DNA of 64,000 nucleotides from Phallusia mammillata (taxonomy: Eukaryota), in NCBI GenBank assembly GCA_965637545.1, contig OZ281497.1:22816001-22880000 (forward strand), read 5' to 3'. Positions 9,401 to 64,000 of this stretch are shown in pieces. The notes beneath the pieces are model-generated. The model did no database searches and was not told the DNA's origin. It worked only from the letters and a program-made list of their open reading frames with translations. A program made the position numbers and the translations under genes. Numbering within the stretch: the first letter of the stretch is position 1; each line of letters starts with the position of its first letter.

Positions 9401-10759
9401 AAGCTCAGCAATCCAATAAACACATTTCTCAAACACATCTTGGCAATTTGTATCATTGTGATAAATGATGTTTTTGTTATTTTCTACAGAGCAACACACA
9501 CTAAACCATCTGTTAATTCAATGGCAACTGTGCGTTCCCCACAACAAAGTACAAACGGTATGAAAGTAAACAATAACATTACCAAGTTTTAAAAGTTGTT
9601 TCTTCTTTTTCAGGGCCTTCTACCTCTGGAAATGTCGATCAACATGAATATGAAAATTTCAGGAATGAATATGAAAACGTGAATATAAACGCAACAAATA
9701 AAGACGCTGCTTACGAGGAAATAAAATAAATATTTAAAATTTGAATCCTTGTTTTCGGCATTTAATATTATGCTGGTTTATGTTGTTAGTTATTTGTAGT
9801 GCTCTTACGATTGTCTCGATGCTTGTATATAAACGATATTACATTTTAACCAGTGGTTCCCAACTTTTAGTAGTTATACAGACCTTTCATAAAATTGACA
9901 AAAAACTATTTAGTTTAATGATGACGAAGGTAGAACTAACAGCAGCCTCGTGATAACCTCCCATTTCAGGGTTTTTTTCTGCAACAATAAGTCACCATCG
10001 TATCAGCAAGTTGAGGTGCTTTCACACACTTTACTAAGACGGAAATAAAATACAATTCTTAACAAGAAAATGTTAACAAACTGAATTAACAGCAGATTGC
10101 AGGGAGATGAATCAACCAGATTGATCAAAAAGTCGTGCAAACAAATATTTAGCCAATTCGGTTTGTATTTGTGGACAGAACTCGTGTATGGAGAAAAGAT
10201 AGTTTTGTACCAAAATTCATTTCTTGTCTCAGGAAGGATATGTGTGACACTTTACAATCATGAATGAACTAGTTCGTTTATTGTTACACATTTCTGAAAT
10301 GCTTGTAGTAGTTACATTTTGTTACCATAAGATATGATTGAATGTTTTGGTTTCAATCTTACTAGACTTGAATATGTGCTGTTGCAGCTTTATAATACCT
10401 CTTGCATATTATGTAAGAGTTCGAGTCACATATGGAACCTCTTGATTCAGTATTCACTTTGACGCTTTTACACGCCTACGTACTGTAAGTGTGACGAAAT
10501 AGTTGCTTTGTATAACTGCCCCAGGTCACATTCTATTCACGAAGGCATGTGATTCAATATTATCAGGATGTTTTCCATGAAGTGAATCATTTCTATCACA
10601 CACAAGAAAATGAATTGAAGACAATTAGTCTTTGAGTAGGTTGGTGTTTTGCAAGTGCGAAGTTAGTTAGGCAAGAATGAATACAAGGTCGTGCCCCCAG
10701 TTTATGCAGAGTTTACCAAGACGCATGATCTTAAACAAATATAATTTATTAATGATGAA

Positions 10760-32900: not shown

Positions 32901-33183
32901 TGTAATGCCGCAGTAACGGATCAACCAGAACTGGGACCTTCATCGCTCTGGTGAACATTCTTGAACGTTTGAAGGCACAAAAGCGGGTGGATGTATTCCG
33001 AACTGTGAAAGACCTGAGAGATATGAGACCGAATATGGTCGACAACAAGGTAATTCAAGTAAGGTTTGTGTTTACAGATATCCTCTTTTAATAATGATGT
33101 TGTTACAGGAACTCTACAAGTTCTGCTACTCGGTCGTCATGCAATATCTTTCTGATTTCGACACTTATTCAAACTATAAATAA
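23987..33183 (+). CDS. Copy D: lectin-like / 3xFN3 / TM receptor with an intact ectodomain and decayed tandem PTP exons
   Basis: Exons 23987-24056, 24693-24869, 25351-25486, 25869-26014, 26068-26232, 26292-26486, 26641-26741, 26821-26925, 27116-27212, 27300-27400, 27467-27571, 27709-27805, 28194-28294, 28403-28507 and 28587-28801 (TM) are all in frame. PTP-half exons are 29040-29152, 29341-29437, 30372-30574, 30657-30788, 31103-31237, 31300-31435, 31619-31719, ~31878-31967, 32026-32094, 32186-32308, 32374-32490, 32579-32724, 32914-33049 and 33109-33183, carrying four lesions (see findings). Confidence 0.8.
24409..24680 (-). mobile_element. Penelope-like terminal-repeat fragment with a minimal hammerhead ribozyme motif
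   Basis: The - strand reads CTGATGA-aggcgtcttgtataagacgtc-GAAACGTC (24481-24516), followed by AATAAA. The 12-bp TSD AACATTTTCTAG lies at 24397-24408 and 24681-24692. The terminus ATGCCTGGCAGCAATAGC is shared with 42270-42290. Confidence 0.75.
24925..25298 (+). mobile_element. tRNA-derived SINE with a 5' inverted duplication of its own body (fold-back)
   Basis: 13-bp TSD CCAAACCATGCTA (24912-24924, 25299-25311). tRNA-like head at 25042-25115 with A box TAGCTCAGTTGG and B box GGTTCGAATCC. Inverted arms at 24925-25021 and 25115-25211. Confidence 0.8.
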
Positions 33184-46379: not shown

Positions 46380-48200
46380 GCCAAGTTCCCGCCCCAAATT
46401 GAAGATGGTTTTGTACAGAAATTAATTTCTTGTCCTTCAAATTCCGTTTCAAATCAAATCAAATTGAATGCAAATGCCACAAACACTTACTTCTATTGCT
46501 AGTGATTTACCACATTAAATTCGGAAAATCGAAAAACAAACCAAACACAACCAGAACAAGGGACGTGTCACACTTGCCTGAAAATGCTGTGAGAAACCGA
46601 TAGAAGAATATTTTCCCTTGTAAGTATTGAAACACAAAGTCTTAAGTGGGGGCTTAAACGTAGCTTTAAATATTTGGTTCGAAGATTTTGTCAGGCCAAA
46701 ATCAGAAACAGCATTTTAAACAAATAACTTCAACTTTTGTGTTTTACTTCCGTGTTAGGCTACGACCTAGTCCAAGGTACAGGCTTTGTTATTACAACCG
46801 AAACTGATACAATGCTGTATAAGTTCTATTCATCTATAGGTAGCAAGCCTGACTACGCAAATAGCAACCGATATTCTATTGAAAGGAAGCAAAATTCCCT
46901 TTAAAAAGGCACATTTAGTGTTGTAAAAAGTTATGTACAATTGGATTTTGCCAGGTGGACTTTATTCATCGGGTAGCGCATGTATTTCTGACTAGGAATT
47001 TTCCCATAGCGCTTACGTGTGCTCGCAATAACGACGCTCCAAGACAAATCACAGTACGTCAGATTAACTACCTACGTTTACCTCACGGAAATACGTGGTA
47101 GACGGGATTGATTACTTTAAAGGCCCTCTTCCATGCTTGGTGTTTTCTTTACGTTAACCGCTCCTGTAGGTTAAAGGAATTAAATAAACAAATAGATGAT
47201 GAGATATACAGGCAGACAACGTTCAGTCATGCTTTGCGACACAGCGCTCTTTCTTTTAACCATTGTGTTAATTTCTACAACATACAGAAAATTCCATTGA
47301 AGCTAATCAACAATGTGTTATGAGTCAGTACCGTCGGTTGGGCAGATGTGCAGTGTGTAGTCATACCTGATGTAAGGTTAACATCTTGAAGCATGAGGAA
47401 GTGTACATGTGTTGTATACCCAATGATGAAAATAACGACCCAAACAGGCGAAAAATACTAAATGCTTATGTCATCATCAGTGATATGAGAGGCCCCATCA
47501 GTTACACCTGTTTACATAAACTTGAGTCACGTAAAAGATTGATAAAAAATGTGCAAACAAGCGTCGCGTAAAAAGACGGTTGGTGTATGTTATTTTGTAC
47601 AGCACATTGTAAGGTACATTTATCAAATAGAGTGTTGTACATTTAAGCTAGACTGCTGTGAATAAACTAATATTAGTTACAAAGCTTTAGCACAGATAAG
47701 GCCCAGTTTAATTGTGAAATAATCGTGGTCCAGAAGCAAAGCAGTATCGCGAGCAGTACAAGTATAATATAGTTACCATACTGTTTAATTTAAAACGAAA
47801 GCTGATGTGGTCTTAACAGTGCAGCTCGTGACAATATGTAGGCCGTGTATGTTAGTATAGCCAGATTTCGGTACACTAGTTTGTCAGGAGTTACAGGCCG
47901 AAATACCCACAGCCCAACTGCACGATGTTTATGTTATAATTGTAGTGTTTGAAACGCAGCTTGTCTTACAACAAACAAAGCAACAAACACTTTCTTTAAA
48001 TCGGAAGCGAATTGTAATGACAAATAGAAAGTGACCATATATTTGTTCATTGTGACAAACCAGACGTGATGATTGTGGCTTGTATCAGCAAGGTTGTGGT
48101 TATTTCCATGATGGTTCATGTAATAACCGCACAAATTAAACGTAAGTGTGTCACGTTTACTATCAAAAAAGTTAATATCTGATTGCTTGGTTTTAAACCC
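46380..48200 (+). repeat. Duplicated intergenic spacer (paralog of ~58250-60530) containing an orphan PTP exon and the upstream region of the next gene
   Basis: Colinear matches include TTTGTACAGAAA...TTTCAAATCAAATCAAATTGA, AAATCACAGTACGTCAGATT and CAGTTACA...CACCTAAGTCAC/AACTTGAGTCAC, and continue to the signal-peptide exons of F and G. Boundaries are approximate. Confidence 0.75.
46525..46619 (+). pseudogene. Orphan PTP D1 first exon (RNRY exon), with nonsense codon
   Basis: Homologous to 29341-29437 and 51283-51379. The acceptor is mutated to CGG and TAG (46601-46603) replaces the Tyr codon. No neighbouring PTP exons. Confidence 0.8.
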
Positions 48201-51200
48201 AGGTGAGTCAACTATCAACAAAACTGTTAATATTTGTTATTAGGGGTATTTAACTTTGCTGTTTTTGGCAATTAATTGCGTTTAACAACTTATTTGGCGA
48301 AATATTTGCACTTAACAACAAGTTGTTTTCCAGGTTTTAACAAGACCATGGATGCAGTGAAGGACAGTGTGTTGATATTATCTGACGATCTTGTGGATGC
48401 AAACACTGCACAGGAGAAATGTTCTTTGCTGGGTGGAAATCTTGCAATGACTGATGACCCACAGATCAACACAACTCTCACTCAACTCATGACAGACAAA
48501 TACACAACAGGTTTGTGTTGTGGAAAAGAAACCGTTCTAAACTTGATAGTGTTATAAATTAGATGTTGAATGCACTCAGCATATTTTTTTTTAGATTTGA
48601 AGCCAGTATATATTTTTTGAAATGTTTAAACAAAACTTTGTTTCAGATTTGCAGCGGGTTTATATTTTTTATGATCAATCTAAAAAATACGAACGATGCA
48701 AATACTCAAAACATTCGGCTGAAATGGATTTTTGGAAAAGTACAAAATCTCTTGGACATTTGTGGTATTTCGATTTGTATAAAAGGTGAAAACAAGATAG
48801 TAACAAAATTTGTTTACTTGTGATTTTTCTTTTAAAGCTTTATGTTTTTTCAGCAAATATGAAAACACGATGGTGGAAATTTACTTCTGCAATGCCCCGG
48901 GTTGGGTAAACCAGGGTAAAGACAAGTGGGGTGTAACCATTGGAACAAGCTGTAGATTCAATGACGAAAAAGGAAATTGGAATGGTTTGTGCCACACAGC
49001 TAGTTAATGAAAGAATTTATAGGAAATAGCGGCAAAACCGTGCCTTATAACTTTCAGGACGGGAAGTAAGATTTTCATTGTTTTCCAAAACTCAAAAACT
49101 ACAAAAGAAAATATACAACTACAAAAGTGACGCCATAAATTCGGACAAGTTGCGCAGTGTGAATGAAACGTTCGGAAACTTCTCGGTGTACATAGGATCA
49201 TTTCTGGCACCAAGTGAGTGTTTGAATAAATCCACAAAAATACAAACCGTCGGTTTGGATGCAAAAACACAAATAATTTTTAGATATCAAAGTTTTTATT
49301 GGAGCTCGCTACAACACGTCATTGAATGGTTGGTATTGGAGCGACGGATCTCCGGCAAACGTTCCCGTTTCTAAGATTACAACTTGCCAACAAGGAGCGT
49401 TGCATTATGGGATCGGATGGGTGCAGTCAAGCATGAACTGCAGTAAGAAACCGGCTTACTACGCTTGCCAAGTACGATGTGAGTAATCACATCGTTTCAA
49501 AACGGATTAAAAAATACATATGTTTTTTAAATGCTCTTCAATGTTTCTGATTTTCTTGTCTTATGGGAAAGCTACTCGACAAATTTGTGACCAAATTTTC
49601 TTTATGATTTGCTATAACGTCAGGAATCACTTTTAGTTAAACCTTCTGTGACAAAATTTCCATGCAACGCATCAACTGTGCTGGTCAATTGGACTGGACT
49701 TGATCAATTGATCATCAACAACAATTTAACAGCACAGGTCGAAATACAAGTTTTGGTGTTTATTATTTGCGTTAAATCCACCAAATAATGAAATCAACTA
49801 ATGTTTCATTTACATGCGAATACATACAGGTTGAGATTCAAGTCCAGAGTTTCAATCAAACAATCTCCGTTCCGTACTCGGTTCAATCACTTTTAATAGA
49901 AGGTCTTAATCACACTACATTGTATGATATTCTGGTAAGCATATTTTAAAAAAAGGCTGAAATTTGCACAATGCTGTAGTTGACTGCAAATAATGAATCA
50001 ACCATATTTTATATTCCAGATTATAGTAGTTGTCACTGGTTCAATCAACGCAAACGTCATATCCAATCTAACAGTAACAACCCCGGGTAATCCGCCCCCA
50101 AACTGTTTTCCGGGAGACAACACGTCCAATCCTGCAACGAGTATTGGAATGATTGCTGGTCTGGTGATCGGGCTTTTGCTTCTGGTACTTGTCATTGTTG
50201 GGCTGGTGGTCATGTTTATACGTCGAAGACATAGGTTTGTTTTGAATTGATTTGGCTCAAGGCGAATTCGCATTGTAGCTTTTGTCAATGATATGACAAA
50301 TTGTTATCAAAAGTACCATCGTGATTTTAACTTCCTCGAAAGTTAACGGTCGTTTGTTGTAAGTCATTCGTCCAAAAAGAGAAAGCGAAACCCACTTAGT
50401 CATTTAACCTTATATAAATTAAGTTAACTCGCAATGGATATCTAAATATTAGCAAGTACCTTTGTTGAAATACTGAACTGAAACTAACATTCTATTGTAT
50501 TTACAGGCCAAGCAAGGATCAACCTCCACAAGTGGAAGATTCCAGTCATCAATCTTTAGGGTCACCGCAAGGTAGATACGAGGGTAAAATAGCGGACCTG
50601 TTACTACAAAAAGTGCATACGTAGGCATAGGTACCAAACGGTGTGGAAGGGTAATTTTTCCGCAGAAATAAACCTTTTTCATTAATGAGATGTTCAGAAA
50701 ACAAGACAAAAAAAGGATTTATTGGTTTCTTTCAAAAAACTCGCCCTTCCTCTATTTAAGTTTTAGCACCTATGTATATCAATAGGTTGTCGTATCAATT
50801 GTTAATGACTAAGCCTTTAAAATCTGGTTTTCAAGTTGGAAACGGTGTCTACCAAAACGTAGCGCATGAAGCCAGGTCGAATTACACCTTGTTCAAGTTG
50901 TTCAAGAAGAATGTTGAGTCAGGATTTCTTTTTGCCAACGAATTTGAGGTTTGTTGTGTTAACTGCAAGGAAAAGTCTCAAGGAAAAACGTAAAGGGAAA
51001 GTCTGAATACTGTTTATACAACACACACCGTGGATTTATACCCGATGTGACGTCAAATGCCACGTAGTGATCACGTCATTTAGTATTTTGTGGCCTATTC
51101 AGATGAAAATTTTTGATTCTAATCATGTCTTATCAAAACAAGTTCTGGGTTAAAACCTCAATTAACAAACAATCACAACGTGCAAGTTATCATAACACGA

Positions 51201-54200
51201 TTAATTAACTCTTGAAGCAAGTGCCACAAGTAAGGGAAATCATTTACTTCTATTGTTTTTGATGTACCAACTTTCATTTCAGAAAGTCGAAAACCAAAGC
51301 AAAAACAACCACAGAACAAAGGACGTGTCACAGTTGCCGCAAAATGCTGTCAGAAACCGCTACAAGAACATTTTCCCTTGTAAGTATTGAAACACAAAGT
51401 TGAAACGAGGGTTACATGTACTTAAAGTAGCTTCACATGTTTGGATCAAAGCCAAAAAGTTACAAGCCAAAAGCAGAAACAGTATTTTCACAACAAAGAA
51501 CTTCAACTTCTGTGTTTGGATACAATTTGTTGTAAGCAACATTGACTAAACTTGATTCAAAAATATTGTGTCAAAGAACTTTAAATCGCCTTTGTTTAGT
51601 TTCTATTTCATCGTAGTAAAAATGACCAAGGAATAACCCATAACGTCTTTTTCTGTCCTCTAAGACAACCGGGCATTAAAAGGTAATGACGTAACAACTG
51701 GTATGAGAGTCGTTACTCACGTGGGTCATGCACTATTACGTCACACAAGAAAAACAGGTGTTTGTTTACATTTCTAGTCAAACATTTCTGCGTCAGATAA
51801 TTACTTATACATTGATTTTCCACCACAATGATTGTACGTTTTATCTTGTATTTTATATTATTAATTTCAGTCTGTTTTAGTGGATTTTTTGTGTAGGGTT
51901 TGCTACGATAACTTAAATCAATTGTTTACATGGCAAATTTTCGATAAGAGTAAAGAAATAAGTATTGAGCCACCAAGGTCTGATAACAATTAAAACCATA
52001 ATGAAAGCATGAAAGGTGGTCATGCATGGATAGTTTTGCCCTCAGAGTGTTCATTACATTGTAACTGAAACGTGTGTAATTGACTTCCTGTATAACATTT
52101 GTTTGTTCAATAGACGATCATGCTCGAGTGGTTTTGCAAGGAAGCGGTGGAAACGATTACATCAACGCCGCTTATATACCGGGTTACGATAACGAGAAGA
52201 AGTTCATCGCCACTCAGGGTCCAAAGAAGGAGACAATCAACGATTTCTGGTTGATGGTTTGGCAGGAAAACTCCAACATCATCGTAATGCTTACTGGCTT
52301 GGTGGAAAACGGAAAGGTTGCCTTTGTTTACTTACTAACTTAACCAGCCAAAACTCGTTACAAAGATAATATTTAACAAACAAATTTGTCATTCAACTGG
52401 TGTAATGTTAAACAAATATTGGTTTTTTTTCAAGAACTTGTTTTTTGCTGACGTTTCGCCCACCAGAACGGTATGGCTTCTTCAGCTCAATGAATTGGTG
52501 TTCGCAATATATCATCCATTGCTCTGAAGAAGCCAAACCGTTCTGGTGGGCGAAACGTCAGCAAAAAACAAGTTCTTGAAAAAACAGCTAGTATTTTGTT
52601 TACCATTACACCAGTTGAATGACAAATTTGTTAAATATGCAACATGGTAGACGAAACGCTTGTTCGGTATTTGACGACCTTTTCATACTGCCTACATTTG
52701 ATAGCTATTAGTCACTTTATCATTCTACCCGCCGCATCTGTTCGTCACAAAGTACGAAAATTCCCCTATTTCACAAAACATTTATAATTGGGTAATAATT
52801 ATTCCGTACAAAGAGCTTCGTGTGCTGACGCATTTTCAACCAAAATTAAAACCACTTTATCCAAGCTCTATTCAGCCATAAATAGCAGGCCTCACTTTCC
52901 AATTATCAACCGATGTTTTGTTAAAACAAAGTTAACTCGAGATTTCAGTTTTTATTTAAAACCTGTTTTTCTGCAGTCAAAGTGTGAACAATACTGGCCC
53001 GACGTTGAATCTCAAAAGAAATTGTTGCCAGACTTCACAGTTCGAACACAACTTGAAACAACCATCGGTGGAACCGTTCATCGACAGTTCGTCATATCTA
53101 CGACAGCAGTAAGTAAACTGCAAAACAAACAAAGGGTTTGGGCAATTTTCGCTTCTATATGTACACCTTAATGCATAATGACTTGTATCTTCGTCAATAC
53201 CTGATTTTAATTTCAATTTTTACTGCAGGTTAAACCTTCCTTTTGTTGCATTCAAATTTGTTTCTCCACAGAAGAAATTACAAAACAATGTTGCAATAAC
53301 TACTGTTTAAAATTCGAAATTAAACTGTAATATTTTTTCCACACAACAGTCTTGTTACACTTTCTAGGAGCAACGAACCATAACACAGCTGCAGTTTACA
53401 ACTTGGCCCGATCATGGGATTCCAGTAACTACATCCAACATGATCCACCTACGTAACATGGTCGATAATTTACAAAACACAAATGCTCCAATCATCGTGC
53501 ACTGCAGGTAAAGACTTGACAAACCCTATGTTTATTTGATCACTCAAATGAATCATATGTTTGGATGCAGTGTTGGAGTGGGACGCACCGGTACTTACAT
53601 AGCAATGGACACTTTGTTTCATGAACTTGACAACAATAGAACAGTTGATGTTCCACAAACTGTGTTAAAAATGAAAGAGAATCGAATAGACATGATCCAA
53701 AACTCGGTAAACTGTTGTTGCACATATTCTGACTCGAATAACAAATAGAAAAATATGTTTTTAATTACAATCCACGTTTGGTTCTCTAGTGGAGGGTGTA
53801 TGTTGTGACCAAGTCTAGCAACGAATTAATCATATCTTTTTTACTAATTCTGTATTTCTACAGAATCAATACATGTACGTCTACAAACTACTTATGGAGC
53901 GTGAGAGTTTAATGGAAACAGATAGAGATGTGCAAGAACTACAGTCGATGACTTCAAGTGAAATGTGAGCAGTTGTAGTATAGTAACTCGAGCCAAATCT
54001 GCAAGCTAGTACGTCAGAATTGGTGTTGCTGTTCACAATTCACATTTTCTATTTTTTTAACGTTAAAAAGGTTTTTTCTGCTGCAGCAATTTGACTGTCA
54101 TTCAAGCCCGTGAAAGAGCTGTTGCTGTAATTGACACGTTACCCCAGTATTTAACTTGTGTTACAGCCAGAAAATGCAAGAACAAGAATTTGAAGTATTG

Positions 54201-55771
54201 TCATCGTGGAGATTTGGCGAGGAATGGCAAGAAAATCACCCACAGCTGAGAACATGTAAGCTTATATATATGTAGATCAGTGATTCCCAACCTTTCTGTG
54301 GTCGCGTACCACTTTAAGGCTGCGCGTCGTCACCGCGTACCACCTGGCGTCCTAATTTTGCATCAGCTTAGCAAGTGATACGCAACCCGGTGTTTTAAGT
54401 AACAAACGTGTGCAAAAATACGAAATAAATATACTTAAAGGTGACTGAAATTATTTCATTCGGTAACAAATTACATTTAACTTTATTTTACAGACAAGAA
54501 CACGGTGGTCAAACTTTGGGACAATAAAAGCCAAAGCATTGAACAGTTGGATGCTTCCTATATTCAGGCGAGAATAAAATTTGCTTTCACATTGGTTCAA
54601 GCTCTTTTACGCGAAGTGCCTTACTTATATTTAATACCGTAGTTAACATGTATTTTCTCGTTAAAATGCATTTTCTCACATATAATGCGGTTAAATTTTC
54701 AAAAATGTTCTTTCTTTGCTTTTGATACATGCAGGAACATGGCTCTTCGGAATGTATTATCGCTGCAAGAAATCCTGCTTCAGGAGAAGAAGAAAACTTC
54801 TGGAAGATGATCGTTGAACGAGGAGCTTCACTTGTCGTTGATTTAGACAACAGCATTCAAGTAAAATTGACATTTTGCATTTTCCTATAATAGCCCTTTA
54901 CCATATACCATACATCTTTTTCAGATTCCAATCGATGCAGCTTTACAATATGAGGACATTTCGGTTTCTGCATGTGACGTAAATGAAAGTAAACAAAATC
55001 TGATGACTGTCGACGTCTGGTCTGCAACCAACGCTTTTGTAAGCAACCCAATTGCTATGTTTTGTTGTAAAATAGGACAATCTCTCTATAAATACCGTAT
55101 TAGGTAGCAATGCTGATTGAAACTCTGTATTCCGTATTTTTAGGTAGCCCAGCAACTGATGCTTCTGCAAGTCAAGGGATGGAGTGACGTGGAACGACCT
55201 CCGAAAGAAATGGATTTCATCAAACTTATCGAGGAAATGCAACGACTAAGAGCCAAACAGAATTGCAAGTGTGTGTTGGTGGGATGCAGGTAACGAACAA
55301 ATTAGTTTTCCTCATTAGCTACCTGAAAAGTAGATTTAATTTCGGTTAAGTTTTTTCTAAAGGCGTATTGTCTGATGTGAACTCTCAAAGTAACCGGATT
55401 CAACCAACTTTCTTTATTTACAGTAACGGATCAACCAGAACGGGAACCTTCATCGCTCTGGTGAACATTCTCGAACGTTTGAAGGCCCAAAAGCGGGTGG
55501 ATGTATTCCGAACTGTGAAAGACCTGAGAGATATGAGACCGAATATGGTCGACAACAAGGTAACGTTTTATGTAATAAAGAAAATAGGAATGCTAAAAGT
55601 TGGTTTCATATTTCTGACTTCTGAACAAGCAAGATTAAATTCTGTGGATTGGGAAATTAGAACTTTTCCCATAATATTAAATACATCTTGTTACAGGAAC
55701 TCTACATATACTGTTACTCGGTCGTCATGCAATATCTGTCTGATTTCGACACTTATTCAAACTTCAAGTGA
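48069..55771 (+). CDS. Copy F: receptor-type protein tyrosine phosphatase (lectin-like / 1xFN3 / TM / D1 / D2)
   Basis: Exons 48069-48141, 48334-48510, 48647-48785, 48854-49002, 49058-49213, 49284-49478, 49637-49737, 49830-49934, 50020-50234 (TM), 50507-50571, 50836-50948, 51283-51379, 52114-52316, 52977-53108, 53368-53507, 53571-53706, 53864-53964, 54167-54255, 54494-54567 (GC donor), 54735-54860, 54925-55038, 55144-55289, 55424-55559 and 55697-55771 give a continuous frame. The P-loop reads [11 protein letters not shown]. Confidence 0.88.
52372..52665. mobile_element. Short inverted-repeat Penelope-like element with two opposed hammerhead motifs (same family as 42468-43156)
   Basis: Arms TTTAACAAA...CATTCAACTGGTGTAATG / CATTACACCAGTTGAATGACAAATTTGTTAAA. 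The + strand core is CTGAAGA-agccaaaccgttctggtgggc-GAAACGTC (52524-52559). A one-sided ~30-bp extension on the right matches 42468-42500 in reverse. Confidence 0.8.
54278..54350. mobile_element. Truncated hAT-type MITE end
   Basis: CAGTGATTCCCAACCTTT...CGCGTACCAC resembles the left end of 57597-58128. No second TIR was found. Confidence 0.55.
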
Positions 55772-57596
55772 ACTAAGCACCAAGGAGAATTAAAAGTAAA
55801 AAAAAGTCGTAAATTTGCAACGGGCTTAATTAAACTCACGCAACTTCTGTCCAACACTATTTGCAAATTATTTCTTACACTTTACCGACAGTAGTTGTTA
55901 AACAGCGCCGATTTGTTTGTTTTTTGTTGGCATCTTTGTACGCCTTTCCCAACAGATAATAGTTTCCGAACAGATAATAGTCGCATATTTGTCCGATGTT
56001 TATCGTTGTTGTGTGATTTACTTGTGCAATATTTGTTGTAAACAGCAACAAAATTTCTGTATTTTAGTAACAGCTAATTTAACTTTATTTCACAGTGCAA
56101 CTTTTTTGCGCTATAAGTGCTTTGTATCTGTGAAAGATTTTTGTTTTCGCCTTTTTTTAAAAAAATTCCTCGTTATTTTTCAACGCATGTTTTACCAACA
56201 CAAGCTATTGCGACGAATTAATGTCCTTGTTCATTTTGTAAACTTACACAAATCAATATTCCAGTTGTACCAAAACCAATGCGAGAATTTCACATGAAAA
56301 TAATAATTGTAGTTAATGAAATAGATTTAAAAATGTAAGTTTATATTTCAGTAAACAATCTTGACATAAGAAACATCAGTTTTCGTTTTACTAACCACTA
56401 GATAGCATGAATGGATAGAGCTAGCACGACTATGATGGCAACTGTTGTAGTGAATTTAAGTCTGCTTGATCCGTTTCCGGAGTTGCAGTTGTCTAAATGT
56501 AAATATTTACTAAACAATCCGAACATTCAAATAAACATTTCAAACTTTTCTACAAATTGGAATCATTTGTTGCAGATTTTAATTTATGTTTTAAAACTAA
56601 GAAACAAAATCACAAAAAAACGGGGGAAGATAGTTCCCAAAGAGAAACCGAAAATTACAGAGCAACTTAATTAAAAACACTCCAAAACCTCTGCACGACA
56701 CAACTGCACCCTTTCCATAGGAACTTATAGGTGCGAGAGAGGCACATGCTCTTCTTGAAATACAATTATATGTTCCGTAGGTTGTCCTACAAAAAAATTC
56801 TGAAAGCAGTTGAAAAAACACCAGCATAAGGCGACAAATGACAGAAGTAAAAAGCATAAGAAGTGCTGTTTTTGTCACCTTCAACGAATAAGATCAAATC
56901 TTGCAAATTTCTTGTTATAAAAGTTATTTGCATTGTAAGATGGTCAGGTTGACTTTAGTCAACAAACATCTAATGCATAGTCCTGGTGCGTCAGATTCAC
57001 CAGCTACGCTAACCCCAGGGAAACACCAAGTATAGACGGTATTGATCACCTAAAAGGCCTCATGCAGGTCATGGAATTTTATATTTGTCAGACAGTGCAT
57101 AGTGAGGACAAAAGGTTCGGGGTAGATTCAGGGTAGATACATATGAAAAAATGTAAGTAAAGTTTGTGAAATACAGGCAGAGTTGCGTCATGCTTTTCCA
57201 AGATGCGTTCTTTTTTTCAGACTATTGTTCACTTCTACAACCCACGGTTCATTGAAGCAAGGCAACAGACTTTTATGAGTCAGTTCATAAGTCAATTCAT
57301 TCAACCACACACAGGAAACTGCAATGAAGATCTTTTAGGCAGATGTGCAGCGGGCAGTCATAAGTCATGTTGTAATGTTAACATACTGTAACGTATTAAT
57401 CTTCAAGCAAGGAAACAAATGTAGATTCGTGTATCGTTGTTATGTATTGCTTCGTACAGAACACTGCCTAGTAAACATTTCTCAAATACAGAGGTTTGTT
57501 GTAGGTGGACTTACATAATTTACACAGCTTAAGCACAGTTAAGGTTTGGTAGAGCCGTAATTATTTTGATCTAAAGCAAAATAATACATTCTAGTG

Positions 57597-58128
57597 CAGT
57601 GGTTCCCAAACTTTATCTACTCGCGTACCATTTTTTTGGTTCATGCAGCGTTCTCGTACCACCTACAATCATGTTAGAATTTAATGAATAAAAATGTTAC
57701 TAAACTTTACTAACTAACTTTACCTTAGTAACTTTGGCCTTCAGTAACCAAAGGCTCGTAAATATTAAACAAAACTTAGTCAAACTTTTACCGCCCTCGC
57801 TACAGTGCTACTGTCAACACAACTAGTAGCTTATTACAAAAACTGACTTTAAGGACTTATTACGTTGTAATAACAGATTCATTACGTCATAATAAATCTA
57901 TTTCGTCACAAAGAAACCTTGCTTAACAGTTCAATGCGGCAATACACCAATGAATTAGAATTTAGTAGGAAATATAGTGTGAAATTTCACGCTCTACGTA
58001 ATTTGTGTGAATTAAAACTTGTGTGAAATAAAGATCGCTTTGTGTGAACTTAATAAGTTGCTCGCGTACCACCTTGGAGACCTTCGCGTACCACTAGTGG
58101 TACGCGTACCATAGTTTGGGAACCACTG
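57597..58128. mobile_element. hAT-type MITE
   Basis: Perfect TIRs CAGTGGTTCCCAAACT ... AGTTTGGGAACCACTG; 8-bp TSD TTCTAGTG (57589-57596, 58129-58136); GCGTACCA subterminal repeats. Confidence 0.9.
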
Positions 58129-58423
58129 TTCTAGTGCAACTAAAAATTAAACAATTTAAAGCGTTTGCAGGTAAAAGCAGGAGTTGAATCAGTCAGGTAG
58201 ATCAAAATGTCGTGCAAACGTTTTGAGAAGCAACTGAGTATTGATTTTTCCACTGACATCGTGTATGGAAAGTTTCGAAATTGAAAATATTTTGTACAGA
58301 AAGTAATTTGTTGTCCTTAAACAGTCTTTTTACATCAAACTCCATTTCAAATCAAATCAAATTGATTGAAAATGTCAAAAACGTTTACTTTTGTTATTAG
58401 TAATGTACCACATTTAAATTCAG

Positions 58424-58520
58424 AAAATCGAAAACCAAAGTAAAAACAACCAAAGAACAAGGGACGTGTCTCAGTTGCCGCAAAATGCTGTAAGAAACCA
58501 ATACAAGAATATTTTCCCGT
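58424..58520 (+). pseudogene. Orphan PTP D1 first exon
   Basis: 97-nt exon [32 protein letters not shown] with a CAG acceptor and a GT donor, but no flanking PTP exons. It lies in the spacer paralogous to 46525-46619. Confidence 0.8.
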
Positions 58521-60258
58521 GTACTAAAAGACAAAGTTTAAACGGGGGATACACTTTCCTAAACGTAGTATGAAATATTTTGGATTAAAGATTTGGTCAA
58601 AGGCTAAAGTCGGAACCGGCATTTTTACACAATGAACTTCAACTTGTGTTTTTTACTTCTTTGTTAGCCTGCGACCTAGTCCGCAGTACAGGCTAAGTAT
58701 AAACTAAAGTTGTCTAAGTTTCTTTCAGCTACAGGTAGCAAGCCTCAATGATGAAATAGCAATCGATGTTTTATTGAAAGAGTTGCTTTATTTAGAAAGA
58801 AGGAGTTGTTTCAAGCTGCATACAGTGCACAATCTTTCAACCAAGAAGATAAGCCGTTGGTGACAAGAGATAAGCCTTCATGGCCAGTGCAGCCACCCAG
58901 TTTGTTGGAAGTAACAGACTATAAGTCAATGCTCCACCTAGTGTATGAAGCCTGGCCACTTAAACACAATAGGTGAGTCATGGCTTTATAGTCCTGATCC
59001 TTTGACGGCGTTGTTATAATCATCTTGTATACCTAGAGATTTCAGTTGTTGATGCAAAACCTCTGGCTGCGGCCAAAGTATAAAAATACTTGACTGAATT
59101 TCAATGCAAAATCGAAAAAGGTCTTGAGCCTTTTCAGACAAGCACAAAGTGAAAAACACAAGCAGGACATTCGTATAACATGCATCATTAGGAAGGACAG
59201 AAGGAAAGTACTGTTACATTCACTTACAACGAATGTGACCAAAGACACACCGACAAATTTAGTGTTTCTGACTAGGAATTTCCCTGCAACGTTTATGTGC
59301 ATTCACAATAACGACGCACCATAATAAATCACAGTACGTCAGATTTACTAACTACGCTTACATCACGAAAATAACTGGTAGGCGGGATTAATTACGTTAA
59401 CCACCTCTTGTATGCTCGGTGTTTTCTTTACGTTAGCCGCTTCTACGGGTTATAGAAATTTAAAAACAAATGGAGGATGAGATATACAGGCAGGCAACGT
59501 TGAGTCATGCTTTGCGAAGCAGCGCTGTTTCTTTCAACCATCCCTGATAATTTTTACAACATACAGAAAACGCAATGTGTTATTAGTCAGTACCGTTGGT
59601 TTTGCAGATGTGCAGTGGGTAGTCATACCTGTTGTAAGGTTAACATCTTGACGCATGAGAAAAAGGAATATAATAGTGTAAATGTTTTGCATATTTATTG
59701 ATGAAAATAACGGCCCAAATAGACGTAAAAAGCGACATGCTTTATATTTCAAACGTTTCGGTAAATGCTCGTGTCATCATCAGTGAAATAAATGGCCACA
59801 CCAGTTACATCCGTTTATATACACCTAAGTCACATAAAAAAAATTGAGTTGCGGTTACGTAACAGATTATTAAAAAAGGTGGGAAGCAAGCGTAAAGACG
59901 GTATGTTACTTTGTACTGCACAGTGTCTAATACTTTTATCAGATAGAGTGTTGTACATTTTAGCTAGATTGTTGTGAATGAACTAGTATCAGTTACAGAG
60001 CTTCAGCACAGAAAAGGCCCAGTTCAATTGCGAAATAACTGTGGTGCAAAGCAAAACAGCACCGCGAGGAATTCAACTATGATACAGCCACTATACAATT
60101 TAAAACGATTGCAGTTAAAAGCTGCAGTAATCGTCAGTGCAGCTAGTGACAACATATTGGCCGTATTGGCTATACCCACATTACGTCACTCCAGCTTGTC
60201 AGGAGTAACAGGCTGGAAAGCCCACAGCCCAACTGTTTGTTCGATGTTTATGTTAGTG

Positions 60259-60351
60259 CAGCGGTTTTTAACCGTTTTTGTACACCCATTTTTGTTTAAT
60301 AAATTTGTTTAGTTAACTTTTGGCTCACGCCCCCCTGGTTAAGAGCCACTG
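60259..60351. mobile_element. Internally deleted hAT-type mini-MITE
   Basis: TIRs CAGCGGTTTTTAACC ... GGTTAAGAGCCACTG; flanks TGTTAGTG/TTTTAGTG (7/8 TSD match). It is absent from the paralogous spacer near 47930. Confidence 0.7.
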
Positions 60352-60449
60352 TTTTAGTGTGTTTCAAACAGATTGACTTCTACATCTGCAGCGAGTAGTA
60401 ATGACAAGTAAAAAGTGGCCGTATATTTGTTCATTGTAACAAACCAGAC

Positions 60450-63400
60450 ATGATGACTGGGCTTTCCATCAGCAAGATTGTGGTTATTTCAATGATGATT
60501 CATGTTATAACCGCACAGGCTAAATGTAAGTTTCACTGTCACTAACTGTTATTATTCGTTTGTTTGTTTGGTTTATATCCAGGACTACTTTATTGCTCTG
60601 CGACCCCTTGATGGGTATAGCCCAGGGGTGCACAACCTTACCCGCATCACAAATTTTTATTTCACCAACAGCCCTTTATTGCCTGCTTGCTTGTGTTTTA
60701 AATTACTGCTGCAAAGAAATACTTGTATATTAAAAAAATATATATACTATTTAATAGCGCCTAAAAAGCCTAAATTAATTTCTTACTTAAAACAGAAATT
60801 GGCAGTCTTAGCTTTTATGACGTCATAATCTATATTGTGACGCTTGTGGCATATCCCTTTTCAGGTTGTTTGCACACAAACGGCATAAAAAATATTGGCA
60901 TATATGGCTACTAGGCAGGTAATACTCTTTTAAATTCCACAAAATGTGTTTAGAGCTGTTTGAAAATCAAAATATTGATCAAAAGAGTTTTTATTTACGT
61001 CAAAGCCGCAGCATAAACTCGTCTCTGTACGGCCGCAAGGTTGTGCACCCCTCGTATAGCCTTCACACGAGAATGAAGTATAAACAATTAATTGACGCGC
61101 GTATACCATTTTTTGAGACTGAAAATTATTGGGGTCGCGACCCACAGTTTGAGAAGCCCTGTCTTAAGTGACTCTGTTCAAGTAATAAAATAGGACTTAG
61201 GTCTAAACACAGCCCTTACACACCTGAACTAGTTTATGTGATTAATTGTGCCAAAAGCGCTGCAATGCCCCAAGCTTAAGCATGTTAATGCAATAAACAA
61301 CTCATTATTCGAAATATTTGCAGTTAACTATGAGTTATTGTGCAGGTTGCAACAAAACTTTTCAAGCACTGAAGGACAGTGTGTTGATATTATCTGACGA
61401 TCTTGTGGATGCAAACACTGCACAGGAGAAATGTTCTTTGCTGGGTGGAAATCTTGCAATGACTGATGACCCACAGATCAACACAACTCTCACTCAACTC
61501 ATGACAGACAAATACACAACAGGTTGGCATATGTGTATATGATGTTAAGCCTTAGCAACAAAGTTCAACAAAGACACCTAACTGCCTGTCCCAACAAAAC
61601 GTTGTTTCAGATTTGCAGCGTGTTTATGTTTTTTATGATCAATCTAAAAAATACGAACGATGTAAATACTCAAACAATTCGGCTGAAGTGGATTTCTGGA
61701 AAAGCACAAAATCTCTCGGACATCTCTGGTATTTCGACTTGTACGAATGGTAAAAAACAGATATTTACAAAACTTGTCATTATCAATTGGATCAGCGGTC
61801 CTCAAACTTTTCAGTATAGCTGCCCGTTCCATCATCTCGAGGATATTCGGTAGAATGTTTACATTAGAAAACAAAAACTTGAATTAAAATCACTTGTATG
61901 AAAGGTTCACACCAGATAGTTACAAACTTGTCGCTACCAAGTAGACTGAATTTTTTTGAACAGGAATCCTGAAAACTCAATGGAATCAATTTACTTCTGC
62001 GAGACTTGGAAAGACAGAAATAAGGAGAAGTGGAATGTGACCATTGGAAGAAATTGTGAAGGCCTAGACAACTATGGAAATTGGAACGGTTGGTGTTCTA
62101 TTTACCTCAGTAACGTTTATTTAATCACAATAACATATTGAAGAAAAAAAACATATTGAAGTATTTCTACTGTTTATGGTTTTGCTTCTAATTGACGACA
62201 ACAAAATCTTTTATTTAATGTTTCGATCTCACTTACAAATATTTGCAGGATGGAACCTACGATATTCTTTATTTTCCGACACCAAAACAAGGAAACTCCA
62301 AAAGGAAATATTTAGCTATGGAAGCATCGGTCAAATGCGTGGAAGCAAATTGCGAAGTGTAAATGAATCGTTTGAAGGCTTCACTACATATGATGGATCG
62401 TTCCTGGCACCAAGTGAGCGTTTGATGTTAAAAATATACCCCCATGTTATAATGAATTTAGTGTATTTCTAGAAGTTAATGTGTTTGTTGGAGCTCGTTA
62501 CAACACATCTACAAATGGTTGGTATTGGAGCGACGGATCTCCGGCAAACTTTCCTGTTTCCAACGTTACAACTTGCCAGCAGGGAGCGTTGCATTATGGG
62601 ATCGGATGGGAGCAGTCAAGCATGAACTGCAGTCGTGAACCGGCATACTACGCTTGCCAAGTGAAATGTGAGTAGTTGCAAGGTTTTCACAGTATATCAC
62701 TACAAAGCTTGGCAAAAGGTATAACCTTTTGGATTGAAGTTTTATCTTATTTTTAAATTGGCTAAGTATGTTTCAGTGAACGTTTGTAAAAAGGTTTGAA
62801 AGCAACTTCTATAGTTACAAACATAATTTGTGAGGTATTTCACTTTAAAACTTAACAACTTTTTGCAGTAAACACGACTGCAGATACATTTCCATGCAAC
62901 GCTTCAACAGTGCTTGTCAGTTGGACTGGACTTGATCCATTCATCAACAACAACAATTTAACAGCACAAGTGAAAATAAAAGTTTTGTTGTTTATTATTT
63001 GCGTTAATGCACCGAATAATACAAATCATCTACAGTTTAGTTTACAAACAAATACATACAGGTTGAGATTCAGGTTCATGGGTGGAATCAAACATTATTT
63101 GTTCCGTATTCGGTTAAATCACTTTTATTTGAAGGTTTTAATCACTCTACATTTTATGATATTCAGGTAAGCATATTTTGCGCTAAAACTAAAAACTAAA
63201 GCGTCTGGAATTTGCACAACGCCTAACTTAGCTGCAAATACTAAACCATTTTTATTTTTATTTCAGATCACAGTCGTTTTCACTGGTTCAACCACATCCA
63301 ACATCACCGCCAATCTGACAGTAAGAACTCCGGGTAACCCCCCTCCAAGCTGTTTTCCTGGAGATAACACGGCCAGTCCCGCAACGAGTGCTGGAATGAT

Positions 63401-64000
63401 TGCTGGTCTGGTCATCGGGCTGTTGCTTCTTGTACTTGTCATGGTTGGGGTGGGGATCATATTTAAACGTCGAAGGCACAGGTTCGTATTTGATTGATAA
63501 ATCAATACATTTTAATGAATAGATAAATCAGTTCTGCTTTCGTTACGACTAAAACCAGCTGGGATAATAAAGACAAACACGTTATCGGTAAAATCAGATT
63601 TAAAAAGGGTTTGTTTCTACGCAAACCTCATGCACCAGATACATGTTTTGAATCCCCAAAAATTCGCTTTTTTGTTTCGGTAGCTGTGTTGTTTGGCCAA
63701 AAACAAAGCTCATCAATCAACTTAGGACATTTCCCACTTTGAACCACTGCTAAAAAGCATGTTTTTGTTTCATTTTCTGCAGAGCAACACACGGTAAACG
63801 AACTACTAATTCATTGCCAACTGCGCGTTCTCAACAACAAAGAACAGAAGGTAAGAGAAACGTGCACAATAACATGAGATGCCTTTGAAAGTTGTTTCGA
63901 CTTTTGCAGGGCCGTCTACCGCTGGAAATGTAGATGAACATGAATATGAGAACTTCAGAACTGAATATGAAAACATGAATGTAACAACAACAAACCCCAA
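60450..64000 (+). CDS. Copy G: lectin-like / 1xFN3 / TM / tyrosine-motif-tail receptor without PTP domains; last exon runs off the window
   Basis: Exons 60450-60525, 61346-61522, 61611-61749, 61964-62109, 62249-62413, 62473-62667, 62869-62969, 63062-63166, 63267-63481 (TM), 63783-63850 and 63910->64000 (GPSTAGNVDEHEYENFRTEYENMNVTTTNP...). No stop or frameshift was found. Confidence 0.88.
60623..61053. mobile_element. hAT-type MITE in intron 1 of copy G
   Basis: TIRs CAGGGGTGCACAACC ... GGTTGTGCACCCCTC; 8-bp TSD GTATAGCC (60615-60622, 61054-61061). Confidence 0.85.

What the first reader, a model, noticed from the sequence alone, without database searches (positions are those of the whole stretch)
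48069..64000. Candidate paired-receptor system: one ectodomain family wired either to tandem tyrosine phosphatases or to a phosphatase-free tyrosine-motif tail
Seen: adjacent intact copies F and G share the signal-exon type, a split lectin-like domain, a single FN3 repeat and a near-identical stalk/TM ([33 protein letters not shown]). After the phase-2 intron following the TM, F continues into PTP D1+D2, while G has two short exons with EYENF/EYENM. Copy B has the same short tail, and D/E/A have PTPs. Established: vertebrate paired receptors (KIR, Ly49, SIRP, PILR) couple similar ectodomains to opposing tyrosine signalling, and their inhibitory members recruit SHP phosphatases through ITIMs. 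Inference: here the dephosphorylating arm is built into the receptor, and the short-tail copies are kinase-substrate/SH2-docking partners. That would make this a rapidly evolving recognition cluster (immunity or allorecognition). I do not know of a description of this lectin-FN3-PTP versus Tyr-tail pairing, but could not search.
Basis: partly seen in the sequence, partly recalled or inferred. Interest (0 to 1): 0.9.

Follow-up and report, generated by a model that had tools for sequence, protein, structure and literature searches.

The report
Lectin-type receptors: phosphatase or docking tail
A sea-squirt gene cluster puts one lectin-like outer domain either on a PTP-alpha-type tyrosine phosphatase or on a short tail of phosphotyrosine docking motifs; the family is real and unstudied, but an activating/inhibitory "paired receptor" role is not shown.

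Summary
F (48069-55771) splices into an open 987-aa receptor: signal peptide, C-type-lectin-like domain split by a three-exon insert, one FN3-like module, stalk/TM, then PTP D1+D2. G (60450-64000) has the same 9-exon ectodomain and the same phase-2 intron after the TM exon. It then has two short exons carrying EYENF and EYENM. The window ends inside G's last exon. Copy B has the same tail, with a stop and poly(A) signals at 9727.

Homologues in Clavelina (both classes) and Ciona (short class) are annotated "uncharacterized"; no paper describes them. Modelled homologues confirm the CTLD fold; FN3 support rests on a low-confidence model.

The phosphatase is PTP-alpha/epsilon-type, including its C-terminal Y-x-N-F-K Grb2/Src site, so the two classes share docking motifs and are not clearly opposed. 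The short tails have no ITIM or ITAM, and the TM has no charged residue. No pairwise dN/dS exceeds 1. RNA data did not show G transcribed.

New here: the genes are mosaics. The insert exons E4-E5 fall into two old types, F~B and G~D, while the core lectin exons are homogenised.

The scan had already noted arrays of this family on other pieces of this genome.

The parts
48069..55771 (+). Copy F: complete 23-exon gene, 987-aa receptor tyrosine phosphatase
   Evidence: Spliced model is one open frame with GT-AG introns throughout, except one GC donor. Exons are conserved in copies D, E and A.
48069..48141 (+). F exon 1: start codon and signal peptide ([24 protein letters not shown]), donor GTAAGT, phase 1
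   Evidence: The only other copy in the window is G's exon 1.
48334..48510 (+). F exon 2: N-terminal half of the C-type-lectin-like domain
   Evidence: Aligns to the N-half of Clavelina P0014 and Ciona P0019. The P0014 model matches CTLD structures.
48647..49213 (+). F exons 3-5 (48647-48785, 48854-48984, 49058-49213): about 140-aa insert inside the lectin-like domain; E4-E5 are the variable cassette (type I, shared with B)
   Evidence: The insert is conserved in the Clavelina and Ciona proteins. E4/E5 aa identity: F-B 73/88%, F-G 51/58%. dS is 0.33 within the type and above 1.1 between types.
49284..49478 (+). F exon 6: C-terminal half of the lectin-like domain (FIGARYN..WYWSDGS..C..C..YYACQ)
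   Evidence: A profile of this exon gives only NK-type CTLDs as its (weak) PDB hits. It retrieved the ascidian family from 1.84 billion proteins.
49637..50234 (+). F exons 7-9 (49637-49737, 49830-49934, 50020-50234): one FN3-like module, Pro-rich stalk, TM helix, RRRH stop-transfer; the donor leaves phase 2
   Evidence: The equivalent Ciona module models as a 7-strand sandwich whose Foldseek hits are almost all FN3, but the model has low pLDDT.
50786..50948 (+). F exon 10: juxtamembrane segment with VYQNV (YxN) and the start of PTP D1
51283..53964 (+). F exons 11-16: PTP domain D1 with [25 protein letters not shown] and Q-loop
   Evidence: Pfam PF00102 on these exons, E 1e-11 to 9e-28; model
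54167..55771 (+). F exons 17-23: degenerate PTP domain D2 ([14 protein letters not shown]) and C-terminal ...[10 protein letters not shown]-stop
   Evidence: Pfam hit. The last exon aligns end to end with PTPRA/PTPRE '...FSDYANFK'.
54568..54569 (+). GC dinucleotide at the donor of F intron 18 (CAG|GCGAGA); A, D and E have GT here
58424..58519 (+). Relic copy of PTP exon 11 (open, 87.5% aa identity to F's) in the F-G spacer. It belongs to a 2.2-kb unit (58278-60531) duplicated from 46396-48147 upstream of F.
60450..64000 (+). Copy G: 11 exons visible, 484+ aa, phosphatase-less receptor; the window ends inside the last exon
   Evidence: Genomic contigs of two DNA runs match it without differences at several places.
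60450..60525 (+). G exon 1: signal peptide of the same type as F
61346..62667 (+). G exons 2-6 (61346-61522, 61611-61749, 61964-62088, 62249-62413, 62473-62667): split lectin-like domain; E4-E5 cassette of type II, shared with PTP-bearing copy D
   Evidence: G-D similarity runs through the introns.
62869..63481 (+). G exons 7-9 (62869-62969, 63062-63166, 63267-63481): FN3-like module, stalk, TM ([24 protein letters not shown], no charged residue), phase-2 donor
63783..63850 (+). G tail exon T1 (ATHGKRTTNSLPTARSQQQRTE)
   Evidence: Best-scoring GT/AG pair in frame. Collinear with B's T1.
63910..64000 (+). G tail exon T2, cut by the window end (GPSTAGNVDEHEYENFRTEYENMNVTTTNP...)
   Evidence: It is 75% identical to B's T2, which runs about 10 codons further to a stop.
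6709..9729 (+). Copy B (comparison): same ectodomain with two FN3-like modules, TM, tail exons 9490-9557 and 9614-9729 ending ...EYENFRNEYENVNINATNKDAAYEEIK-stop, AATAAA overlapping the stop

Best explanation
Shown:
- The window is a tandem, same-strand array of an ascidian-specific family of type-I receptors.
- The ectodomain is a signal peptide, a C-type-lectin-like domain interrupted by a roughly 140-aa beta-rich insert, 1-3 FN3-like modules and a Pro-rich stalk.
- F is a full receptor tyrosine phosphatase of the PTP-alpha/epsilon (R4) type. Its D1 has all catalytic motifs, its D2 is degenerate, and its end carries the R4-specific C-terminal Y-x-N-F-K.
- G, like B, is a separate phosphatase-less paralogue. 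After the same phase-2 intron its cytoplasmic part is a tail of about 65 aa with repeated E-Y-E-N-x motifs; B adds YEEI.
- Array members are mosaics made by duplication and segmental exchange. G combines an F-like 5' region and FN3/TM, a D-like insert cassette and a B-like tail. This exchange is how one ectodomain comes to sit on either cytoplasmic module.

Inferred:
- Both classes feed the same Src-family-kinase/Grb2 circuit.
- The long form acts like PTP-alpha: it dephosphorylates substrates such as the inhibitory tail of Src-type kinases, and is itself docked by Grb2/Src at its YxN sites.
- The short form acts as a ligand-binding, LAT/NTAL-like docking receptor that recruits Grb2 (pYxN) and Src-type SH2 domains (pYEEI) once phosphorylated.
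- Whether the two classes cooperate or oppose each other is open.
For: Gene models and domains:
- Gene models with conserved splice sites and an open 987-aa frame for F.
- Exon map of seven copies.
- Pfam Y_phosphatase on the D1 and D2 exons.

R4 type:
- The best PDB match of the Clavelina homologue's PTP part is PTPRA at 373 bits, then PTPRE at 349 and PTPRS/LAR at about 345.
- F's last exon hits PTPRA and PTPRE best, aligned end to end onto ...DYANFK.
- PTPRA pY789 binds Grb2 and Src, and PTPRA dephosphorylates Src Y527 (PMC7959691).

Short form as a gene of its own:
- B's tail ends in a stop with a poly(A) signal.
- B and G tails, and the intron before them, are collinear.
- Clavelina XP_076817574 (592 aa, tail ...IYEND...MYQNTYEK) lies about 93 kb from the PTP form XP_076817985, with no PTP exons downstream.
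- Ciona XP_002129521 is a short form.
- Ectodomain dN/dS is 0.13-0.63 in B, D, F and G, so these copies are under constraint.

Folds: CTLD and FN3-like.

Mosaic: per-exon identities, dS values and intron-spanning blastn blocks.

Ascidians have Src, Syk and Grb2 but no LAT or SLP-76 (PMC12065747).
Against: - No transcript evidence for F or G. The two runs that hold the stretch are genomic DNA, and the small RNA runs showed only repeats and a paralogue's E6/E7.
- G's stop codon lies beyond the window.
- Tail dN/dS for B versus G is 0.78 over only 51 codons, which is weak constraint outside the Tyr motifs.
- BLASTP finds no significant similarity between short tails and the juxtamembrane region of long forms, or between tails of different species. 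Homology of the tails is motif-level only.
- F's GC donor could truncate D2.
- All signalling roles are inferred from motifs and from vertebrate PTP-alpha. Nothing about ligand, cell type or phosphorylation was tested.
Confidence: 0.7

Rival explanations
1. Long (phosphatase) and short (Tyr-tail) receptors with matched ectodomains bind the same ligands and give opposite signals. They would serve immune or allorecognition in a fast-evolving cluster.
For: - Clustered genes with similar ectodomains and two cytoplasmic classes.
- Each of the two old E4-E5 cassette types occurs once with a phosphatase and once with a tail: F/B and D/G.
- Both classes persist in Clavelina.
- The family is much expanded in this genome according to earlier scan notes.
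- A snail cluster of PTPRA-like receptors with sugar-binding ectodomains is associated with parasite resistance (PMC12297450).
Against: - One PTP and one tail per cassette type is expected by chance in 4 of 6 arrangements, so it is not evidence.
- The PTP is of the Src-activating R4 type and carries the same YxN motifs as the tails.
- The short tails have no ITIM or ITAM, and the TM has no charged residue.
- Pairwise dN/dS stays below 1 everywhere.
- There are no expression or polymorphism data.
Confidence: 0.2
2. The short-tail copies are by-products of array turnover. They would be truncated duplicates that have lost the phosphatase and are silent, decaying or at most passive decoys, with the tyrosine motifs having no signalling role.
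For: - No RNA support for G.
- Tail dN/dS is 0.78.
- The array contains clear debris: copy C lacks a TM exon, an orphan tail exon lies at 3787-3867, and relic PTP exons lie at 46544 and 58424.
Against: - G keeps 11 exons open with good splice sites, and its ectodomain dN/dS is 0.13-0.63.
- The EYEN motifs are conserved between B and G, and YxN recurs in the Clavelina short form.
- RefSeq models of short forms exist in Clavelina and Ciona.
- Earlier follow-ups on other arrays report a transcribed short-tail copy. I did not check this.
Confidence: 0.12
3. G is not phosphatase-free. T1/T2 would be cassette or alternative exons, and the gene would continue into PTP exons beyond position 64000.
For: - The window ends inside T2 with the frame still open.
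- An orphan tail-like exon sits downstream of PTP-bearing copy A.
Against: - B's T2 is collinear with G's. It ends in a stop overlapped by AATAAA about 10 codons past the point where G is cut, and no PTP exon follows B within the window, where a retrotransposon and then copy C come next.
- F, D and E have no tail exons between the TM exon and E10.
Confidence: 0.06

Closest known systems
Vertebrate R4 receptor tyrosine phosphatases PTPRA / PTPRE (RPTP-alpha / -epsilon)
   Same: - Tandem D1 (active motifs) and D2 domains.
- Best PDB sequence match.
- The last exon aligns end to end with ...FSDYANFK, including the Tyr789-type Y-x-N-F-K Grb2/Src site.
- Heavily N-glycosylated ectodomain: 13 sequons in F and 15 in G.
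   Different: - The R4 ectodomain is short, disordered and without domains. Here it is about 400 aa with a split CTLD and FN3-like modules.
- Here the genes form large tandem arrays with phosphatase-less paralogues.
Paired immune receptors (KIR, Ly49, SIRP, PILR)
   Same: Clustered paralogues with similar ectodomains and two alternative cytoplasmic designs. Sequence is exchanged between members. The lectin-like domain is NK-receptor-like in fold.
   Different: - No ITIM on one partner.
- No charged TM residue or ITAM adaptor logic on the other.
- The ectodomain is type I, not the type II of NK lectin receptors.
- Opposing outputs are not shown, and both classes share YxN motifs.
Transmembrane adaptor proteins LAT / NTAL (LAB)
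   Same: The short cytoplasmic tail's main features are several pY-x-N (Grb2-type) sites and no enzymatic domain. Ascidians are reported to lack LAT (PMC12065747). The comparison itself rests on my knowledge of LAT/NTAL motifs.
   Different: LAT and NTAL have almost no ectodomain and a juxtamembrane palmitoylation CxxC. Here there is a large ligand-binding ectodomain and no CxxC. There is no sequence homology.
Biomphalaria sudanica SudRes1 cluster of PTPRA-like receptor phosphatases (MEGF + galactose-binding domains)
   Same: An invertebrate gene cluster of tandem-PTP receptors with diverse carbohydrate- or protein-binding ectodomains. Haplotypes differ in gene content, and an immune association is proposed (PMC12297450).
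   Different: Different phylum and different ectodomain modules. No phosphatase-less docking-tail partners are described there.
Uncharacterized ascidian proteins XP_076817985.1 and XP_076817574.1 (Clavelina lepadiformis) and XP_002129521.1 (Ciona intestinalis)
   Same: True family members. They have the same split CTLD with insert, FN3-like modules and TM, followed by either PTP D1+D2 or a short Tyr tail.
   Different: Identity to the window's copies is about 30-50% where the exons align (E2, E3, E6). The two Clavelina genes lie about 93 kb apart and are not in a tight array. Only one gene, a short form, was found in Ciona. The tails do not align between species.

Membership tests
R4-type receptor PTP (PTPRA/PTPRE) | Tandem PTP domains, D1 with the catalytic motifs (KNRY-type, WPD, HCxxGxxRTG, Q-loop) | tested here: met
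   F: [26 protein letters not shown]. Pfam PF00102 matches the D1 and D2 exons.
R4-type receptor PTP (PTPRA/PTPRE) | Closer in sequence to PTPRA/PTPRE than to other RPTP subtypes | tested here: inconclusive
   The Clavelina homologue scores PTPRA 373 bits, PTPRE 349 and PTPRS/LAR about 345, which is a small margin. F's last exon scores best against PTPRA and PTPRE, with a weaker, partial PTPRD match. No tree was built.
R4-type receptor PTP (PTPRA/PTPRE) | C-terminal Tyr in Y-x-N-F-K (Tyr789 Grb2/Src SH2 site) | tested here: met
   F ends ...DTYSNFK-stop, aligned with ...DYANFK of PTPRA/PTPRE. A, D and E end in YSNFQ or YSNYK.
R4-type receptor PTP (PTPRA/PTPRE) | Short ectodomain without folded domains | tested here: not met
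   The ectodomain is about 400 aa with a split CTLD and an FN3-like module.
[quoted passage not shown] | CTLD fold | tested here: met
   The AF2 model of Clavelina P0014:24-300 has pLDDT 85-93 in the two halves. Foldseek gives CLEC9A, LOX-1, CLEC-2, Mincle and NKR-P1 at TM-by-target 0.76-0.80 and probability 1.0. The window's E2 and E6 align to those halves. The fold was tested on a homologue, not on the window's own protein.
[quoted passage not shown] | Sequence-profile match (Pfam Lectin_C) | tested here: not met
   No Lectin_C hit on the window exons or on P0014, P0015 or P0019. The E6 profile gives only weak PDB hits, E 0.15-2.6, but all are NK-type CTLDs.
[quoted passage not shown] | Ca2+/sugar-binding motifs (EPN or QPD, plus WND) | tested here: not met
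   E6 in all six copies reads ...GIGW(E/V)QS..NC... with no EPN, QPD or WND. The domain is lectin-like, and sugar binding is not implied.
Fibronectin type III domain | Seven-strand FN3 sandwich | tested here: inconclusive
   The Ciona P0019:270-400 model has 7 strands, and nearly all of the top 50 Foldseek hits are FN3 domains (TM-by-target 0.6-0.73). But pLDDT is only 58, and Pfam fn3 is not matched.
Paired receptors (KIR/Ly49/SIRP/PILR type) | Clustered genes with closely similar ectodomains | tested here: met
   Seven tandem copies. Identity is 73-95% in most exons, with two cassette types in E4-E5.
Paired receptors (KIR/Ly49/SIRP/PILR type) | Inhibitory member signals through a cytoplasmic ITIM | tested here: not met
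   The short tails have no ITIM. The long form has a PTP domain instead. LSYQLL, seven residues from the membrane in F, is the only ITIM-like string outside the PTP domains.
Paired receptors (KIR/Ly49/SIRP/PILR type) | Activating member has a charged TM residue that recruits an ITAM adaptor, or carries its own ITAM | tested here: not met
   The TM is [24 protein letters not shown], with no charged residue. Tyr spacing is YENF-x3-YENM in G and YENV-x10-YEEI in B, which is not the canonical YxxL/I-x6-8-YxxL/I.
Paired receptors (KIR/Ly49/SIRP/PILR type) | Opposite signalling outputs; expression on immune cells | not testable with these tools
   The only RNA runs were tiny and showed no G transcript.
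Transmembrane adaptor proteins (LAT/NTAL type) | Multiple pYxN sites in a short tail without an enzymatic domain | tested here: met
   G has YENF and YENM. B has YENF, YENV and YEEI.
Transmembrane adaptor proteins (LAT/NTAL type) | Minimal ectodomain and juxtamembrane CxxC palmitoylation motif | tested here: not met
   The ectodomain is about 400 aa and there is no CxxC after the TM.

The most novel reading that the evidence does not exclude
Ascidians, which lack LAT, may have built a lineage-specific recognition system from this family. An expandable set of lectin-like ectodomain cassettes would be shuffled within arrays onto either a Src-regulating PTP-alpha-type phosphatase or a Grb2/Src-docking tail. 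The same ligand would then be read by matched phosphatase and docking receptors. That would be a paired-receptor logic with the enzyme built into one partner, used in immunity or allorecognition.
Probability: 0.2. Interest if true: 0.85.

Novelty: new variant of a known kind. Interest (0 to 1): 0.55.

Why it matters
Receptor tyrosine phosphatases of the alpha/epsilon type are known only with a short, featureless outer part and no known ligand. Here the same enzyme sits behind a folded, variable, lectin-like binding domain. The genes are amplified into arrays and accompanied by phosphatase-less paralogues that keep only the Grb2/Src docking motif.

This gives a natural system for asking two questions. 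The first is how ligand binding controls an R4-type phosphatase. The second is whether invertebrate chordates evolved a receptor pairing that does not use ITIM/ITAM.

The array also shows, through its mosaic copies, how cytoplasmic modules are swapped between ectodomain types. The family is present but unnamed in public ascidian annotations, so a description would be new.

Tried and rejected
- RNA test. The one sequencing-run search returned two runs that proved to be genomic DNA, plus very small RNA runs. Laying them on 58001-64000 gave no spliced contig of G. It gave only repeats and a paralogue's E6/E7, so expression and splice junctions remain unverified.
- The three word-index protein searches recovered almost nothing beyond the query proteins. 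They added one further Clavelina PTP form, P0040. The family members came from the HMMER scan with the E6 profile.
- Pfam on single exons and on full-length homologues gave no lectin or FN3 call.
- I tested whether the short tail is homologous to the juxtamembrane segment of the long form. A MAFFT alignment suggested ESMYQNT versus ESVYVNT in Clavelina, but BLASTP found nothing significant. I treat it as a motif-level resemblance only.
- I considered the 'matched pairs' (F/B and D/G share cassette types) as evidence for pairing and rejected it. With 2+2 genes it is expected by chance in 4 of 6 arrangements.
- I considered positive selection on the variable cassette. Pairwise dN/dS is 0.2-0.3, and the large divergence is old (dS above 1), not fast.
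- I considered that the insert is a second CTLD. AFDB hits to tandem-CTLD proteins have TM below 0.25, and the insert is modelled as all-beta. The point is not settled.
- Literature searches for this architecture or for the Ciona locus name found nothing.
- I could not pass the window's own spliced proteins to the fold and profile tools, so folds were tested on database homologues.

Full report
**What the window is.** The window is AT-rich (about 36% G+C) and has no N. A self-comparison and a tblastn map with exon peptides show seven paralogous gene copies, all on the + strand:
- A is partial: D2 exons at 27-1445.
- B spans 6709-9729.
- C spans 18945-21958 and is degenerate. No TM exon was found.
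- D spans 24698-33180.
- E spans 36372-44778.
- F spans 48069-55771.
- G spans 60450-64000+.

A, D, E and F carry PTP exons. B and G carry a short tail. C, and an orphan exon at 3787-3867, carry a second tail type (EYENYKPTNENPxYETIT-stop). Earlier notes of this scan report arrays of the same family on at least five other pieces of this genome. I treated those notes as leads, not evidence.

**Gene models.** I paired GT/AG sites between conserved open segments.
- F is a 23-exon gene whose spliced sequence is one open frame of 987 aa ending at a stop at 55769-55771.
- G has 11 exons in the window. Exons 1-9 correspond one to one with F's.
- The donor after the TM exon (…AG|GTT…) leaves phase 2 in B, D, E, F and G.
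- In F the next exon (50786-50948) begins the juxtamembrane/PTP region.
- In G the next exons are 63783-63850 and 63910-64000+, which encode ATHGKRTTNSLPTARSQQQRTE and GPSTAGNVDEHEYENFRTEYENMNVTTTNP. The window ends there.
- B's tail is collinear with G's, including the intron before it. It reads …EYENFRNEYENVNINATNKDAAYEEIK-stop, with AATAAA overlapping the stop.
- No tail-like exon lies between the TM exon and E10 in F, D or E, and no PTP exon follows B.

G's stop is outside the window. F's intron-18 donor is GC where A, D and E have GT. No transcript was seen.

**RNA test.** When laid on 58001-64000, the first two proved to be genomic DNA, because their contigs cover introns and spacers. 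The RNA runs matched only repeats and a paralogue's E6/E7, with 4 differences in 88 bases. Expression of G is neither shown nor refuted. In the DNA runs the summed word depth over E2, E6 and E7 is 50-200 times the flanking baseline, while E4-E5 stay near baseline. The tool warns that depth is not a copy number. This is only a hint that the core exons are shared by many copies and the cassette is not.

**Relatives.** A profile of exon 6 from six copies was scanned against 1.84 billion representatives. It gave only 22 hits. Three were full-length proteins:
- Clavelina lepadiformis XP_076817985.1, 1090 aa: same ectodomain, TM, PTP D1+D2, ending …ATYSNFA.
- Clavelina XP_076817574.1 / CAK8679940.1, 592 aa: same ectodomain, TM, tail …AIYENDIEPESMYQNTYEK.
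- Ciona intestinalis XP_002129521.1, 483 aa: same ectodomain, TM, Tyr-containing tail.

All three are labelled uncharacterized. The remaining significant hits are mostly short ORF fragments from metagenome contigs. In Clavelina the two genes lie about 93 kb apart on one chromosome, on opposite strands. The short gene is followed by an HSP20 gene and has no PTP exons within about 10 kb. So both classes exist as separate genes outside this genome. The insert exons E3 and E4 align to these proteins, so the insert is a real, conserved part of the family.

**Folds.** Pfam calls only Y_phosphatase.
- An AlphaFold model of Clavelina P0014:24-300 has pLDDT 71 overall, 85-93 in the two lectin halves and 72-80 in most of the insert.
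- Foldseek matches it to CTLD structures: CLEC9A, LOX-1, CLEC-2, Mincle, NKR-P1, Dectin-1 and CD94/NKG2A. TM by target is 0.76-0.80 and the alignment spans about 255 query columns, so this is a CTLD split by an insertion.
- The E6 profile's only PDB sequence hits, though weak, are NK-type CTLDs.
- The sugar-binding motifs EPN/QPD and WND are absent.
- The membrane-proximal module of the Ciona protein models as a 7-strand sandwich whose Foldseek hits are almost all FN3 domains, but pLDDT is only 58.

**The phosphatase.** F's D1 has [25 protein letters not shown] and a Q-loop. D2 is degenerate. The Clavelina PTP region scores best against PTPRA (373 bits) and PTPRE (349), just ahead of PTPRS/LAR at about 345. 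F's last exon, [24 protein letters not shown], scores best against PTPRA and PTPRE, with a weaker, partial match to PTPRD. It aligns end to end with [24 protein letters not shown]. This is the Tyr789 site. When phosphorylated it binds Grb2 and Src, and PTPRA dephosphorylates the inhibitory Y527 of Src (PMC7959691). The long forms also have a juxtamembrane YxN: VYQNV in F and D, TYENL in E.

**The short tails.** G has YENF and YENM. B has YENF, YENV and YEEI. By established SH2 specificity (my knowledge), pYxN is the Grb2 consensus and pYEEI the Src-family SH2 optimum. There is no ITIM, no ITSM and no canonical ITAM spacing, and the TM has no charged residue. The tails resemble the docking site of PTP-alpha in isolation, or a LAT/NTAL-type adaptor tail. 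A review states that ascidian genomes have Src, Syk and Grb2 but lack LAT and SLP-76 (PMC12065747).

**Evolution within the array.** Per-exon identities and Nei-Gojobori estimates show a mosaic.
- The CTLD core exons E2+E6 have dS of about 0.2 in every pair.
- E4+E5 fall into two old types. F~B has dS 0.33 and G~D has dS 0.54. Between types dS is 1.15-1.64 and aa identity is about 50%.
- E3 and E8 group F with G, and B with D.
- The blastn blocks linking F to B and G to D run through introns.
- G therefore combines an F-like 5' region (a duplicated 2.2-kb upstream unit with a relic PTP exon, plus E1-E3), a D-like cassette, an F-like FN3/TM and a B-like tail.
- dN/dS is 0.13-0.63 in the ectodomain exon groups E2-E8, up to 0.82 for the stalk/TM exon E9, and 0.78 for the tail (51 codons). 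None exceeds 1.
- Each cassette type occurs once with a PTP and once with a tail. With 2+2 genes this is expected by chance in 4 of 6 arrangements.

**Reading.**
- The architecture and the two gene classes are shown.
- It is inferred that both classes plug into Src-family/Grb2 signalling. This rests on motif conservation and on the PTP-alpha homology.
The phosphatase subtype is a Src activator in vertebrates, and both classes share the docking motif.
- A snail cluster of PTPRA-like receptors with sugar-binding ectodomains, associated with parasite resistance, is an independent precedent for clustered R4-like phosphatases as candidate recognition receptors (PMC12297450).
- No paper was found on the ascidian family.

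Noticed in passing
window 11716-17900 (- strand): The G+C-rich block between copies B and C is a BEL/Pao-type LTR retrotransposon. Its long ORFs match Peptidase_A17, Integrase_H2C2, rve, DUF5641 and DUF1759.
   Followed up: partly
window 46544-46618 and 58424-58519: Two relic copies of PTP exon 11 lie about 2 kb upstream of the signal exons of F and G. The first has an in-frame stop and the second is open. They sit inside a duplicated 2.2-kb unit (46396-48147 ~ 58278-60531).
   Followed up: partly
window 3787-3867 and 21902-21964: A second tail type, ...EYENYKPTNENP(T/R)YETIT-stop, carries YxN plus an NPxY PTB-type motif. It occurs once as an orphan exon downstream of PTP-bearing copy A and once at the end of degenerate copy C.
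   Followed up: partly
window 54568: The F intron-18 donor is GC (CAG|GCGAGA), whereas A, D and E have GT at the same site. It may be a functional GC-AG intron, or a lesion that would truncate D2.
   Followed up: partly
window 52379-52632: A 254-bp near-perfect palindrome (88% self reverse-complement) lies in F intron 12. Related copies lie in copy E's D1-D2 intron (about 42472-43156). It looks like a MITE.
   Followed up: no
window 48563-48820 and 61470-61850: The exon-3 region is open in two frames in F, G and B. The non-coding frame (C.NKT...DANTQ) resembles exon 2, which hints at an old duplication of exon 2.
   Followed up: no
window 29033-29152 and 32028-32094: Copy D shows a stop at the start of the E10 alignment and a frame shift within E18, so its phosphatase half may be decaying.
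   Followed up: no
window 62515-62602 and 62904-62948: An RNA-run contig matches G's E6 and E7 with 2-4 differences and diverges at both sides. A close paralogue elsewhere in the genome is therefore transcribed.
   Followed up: no
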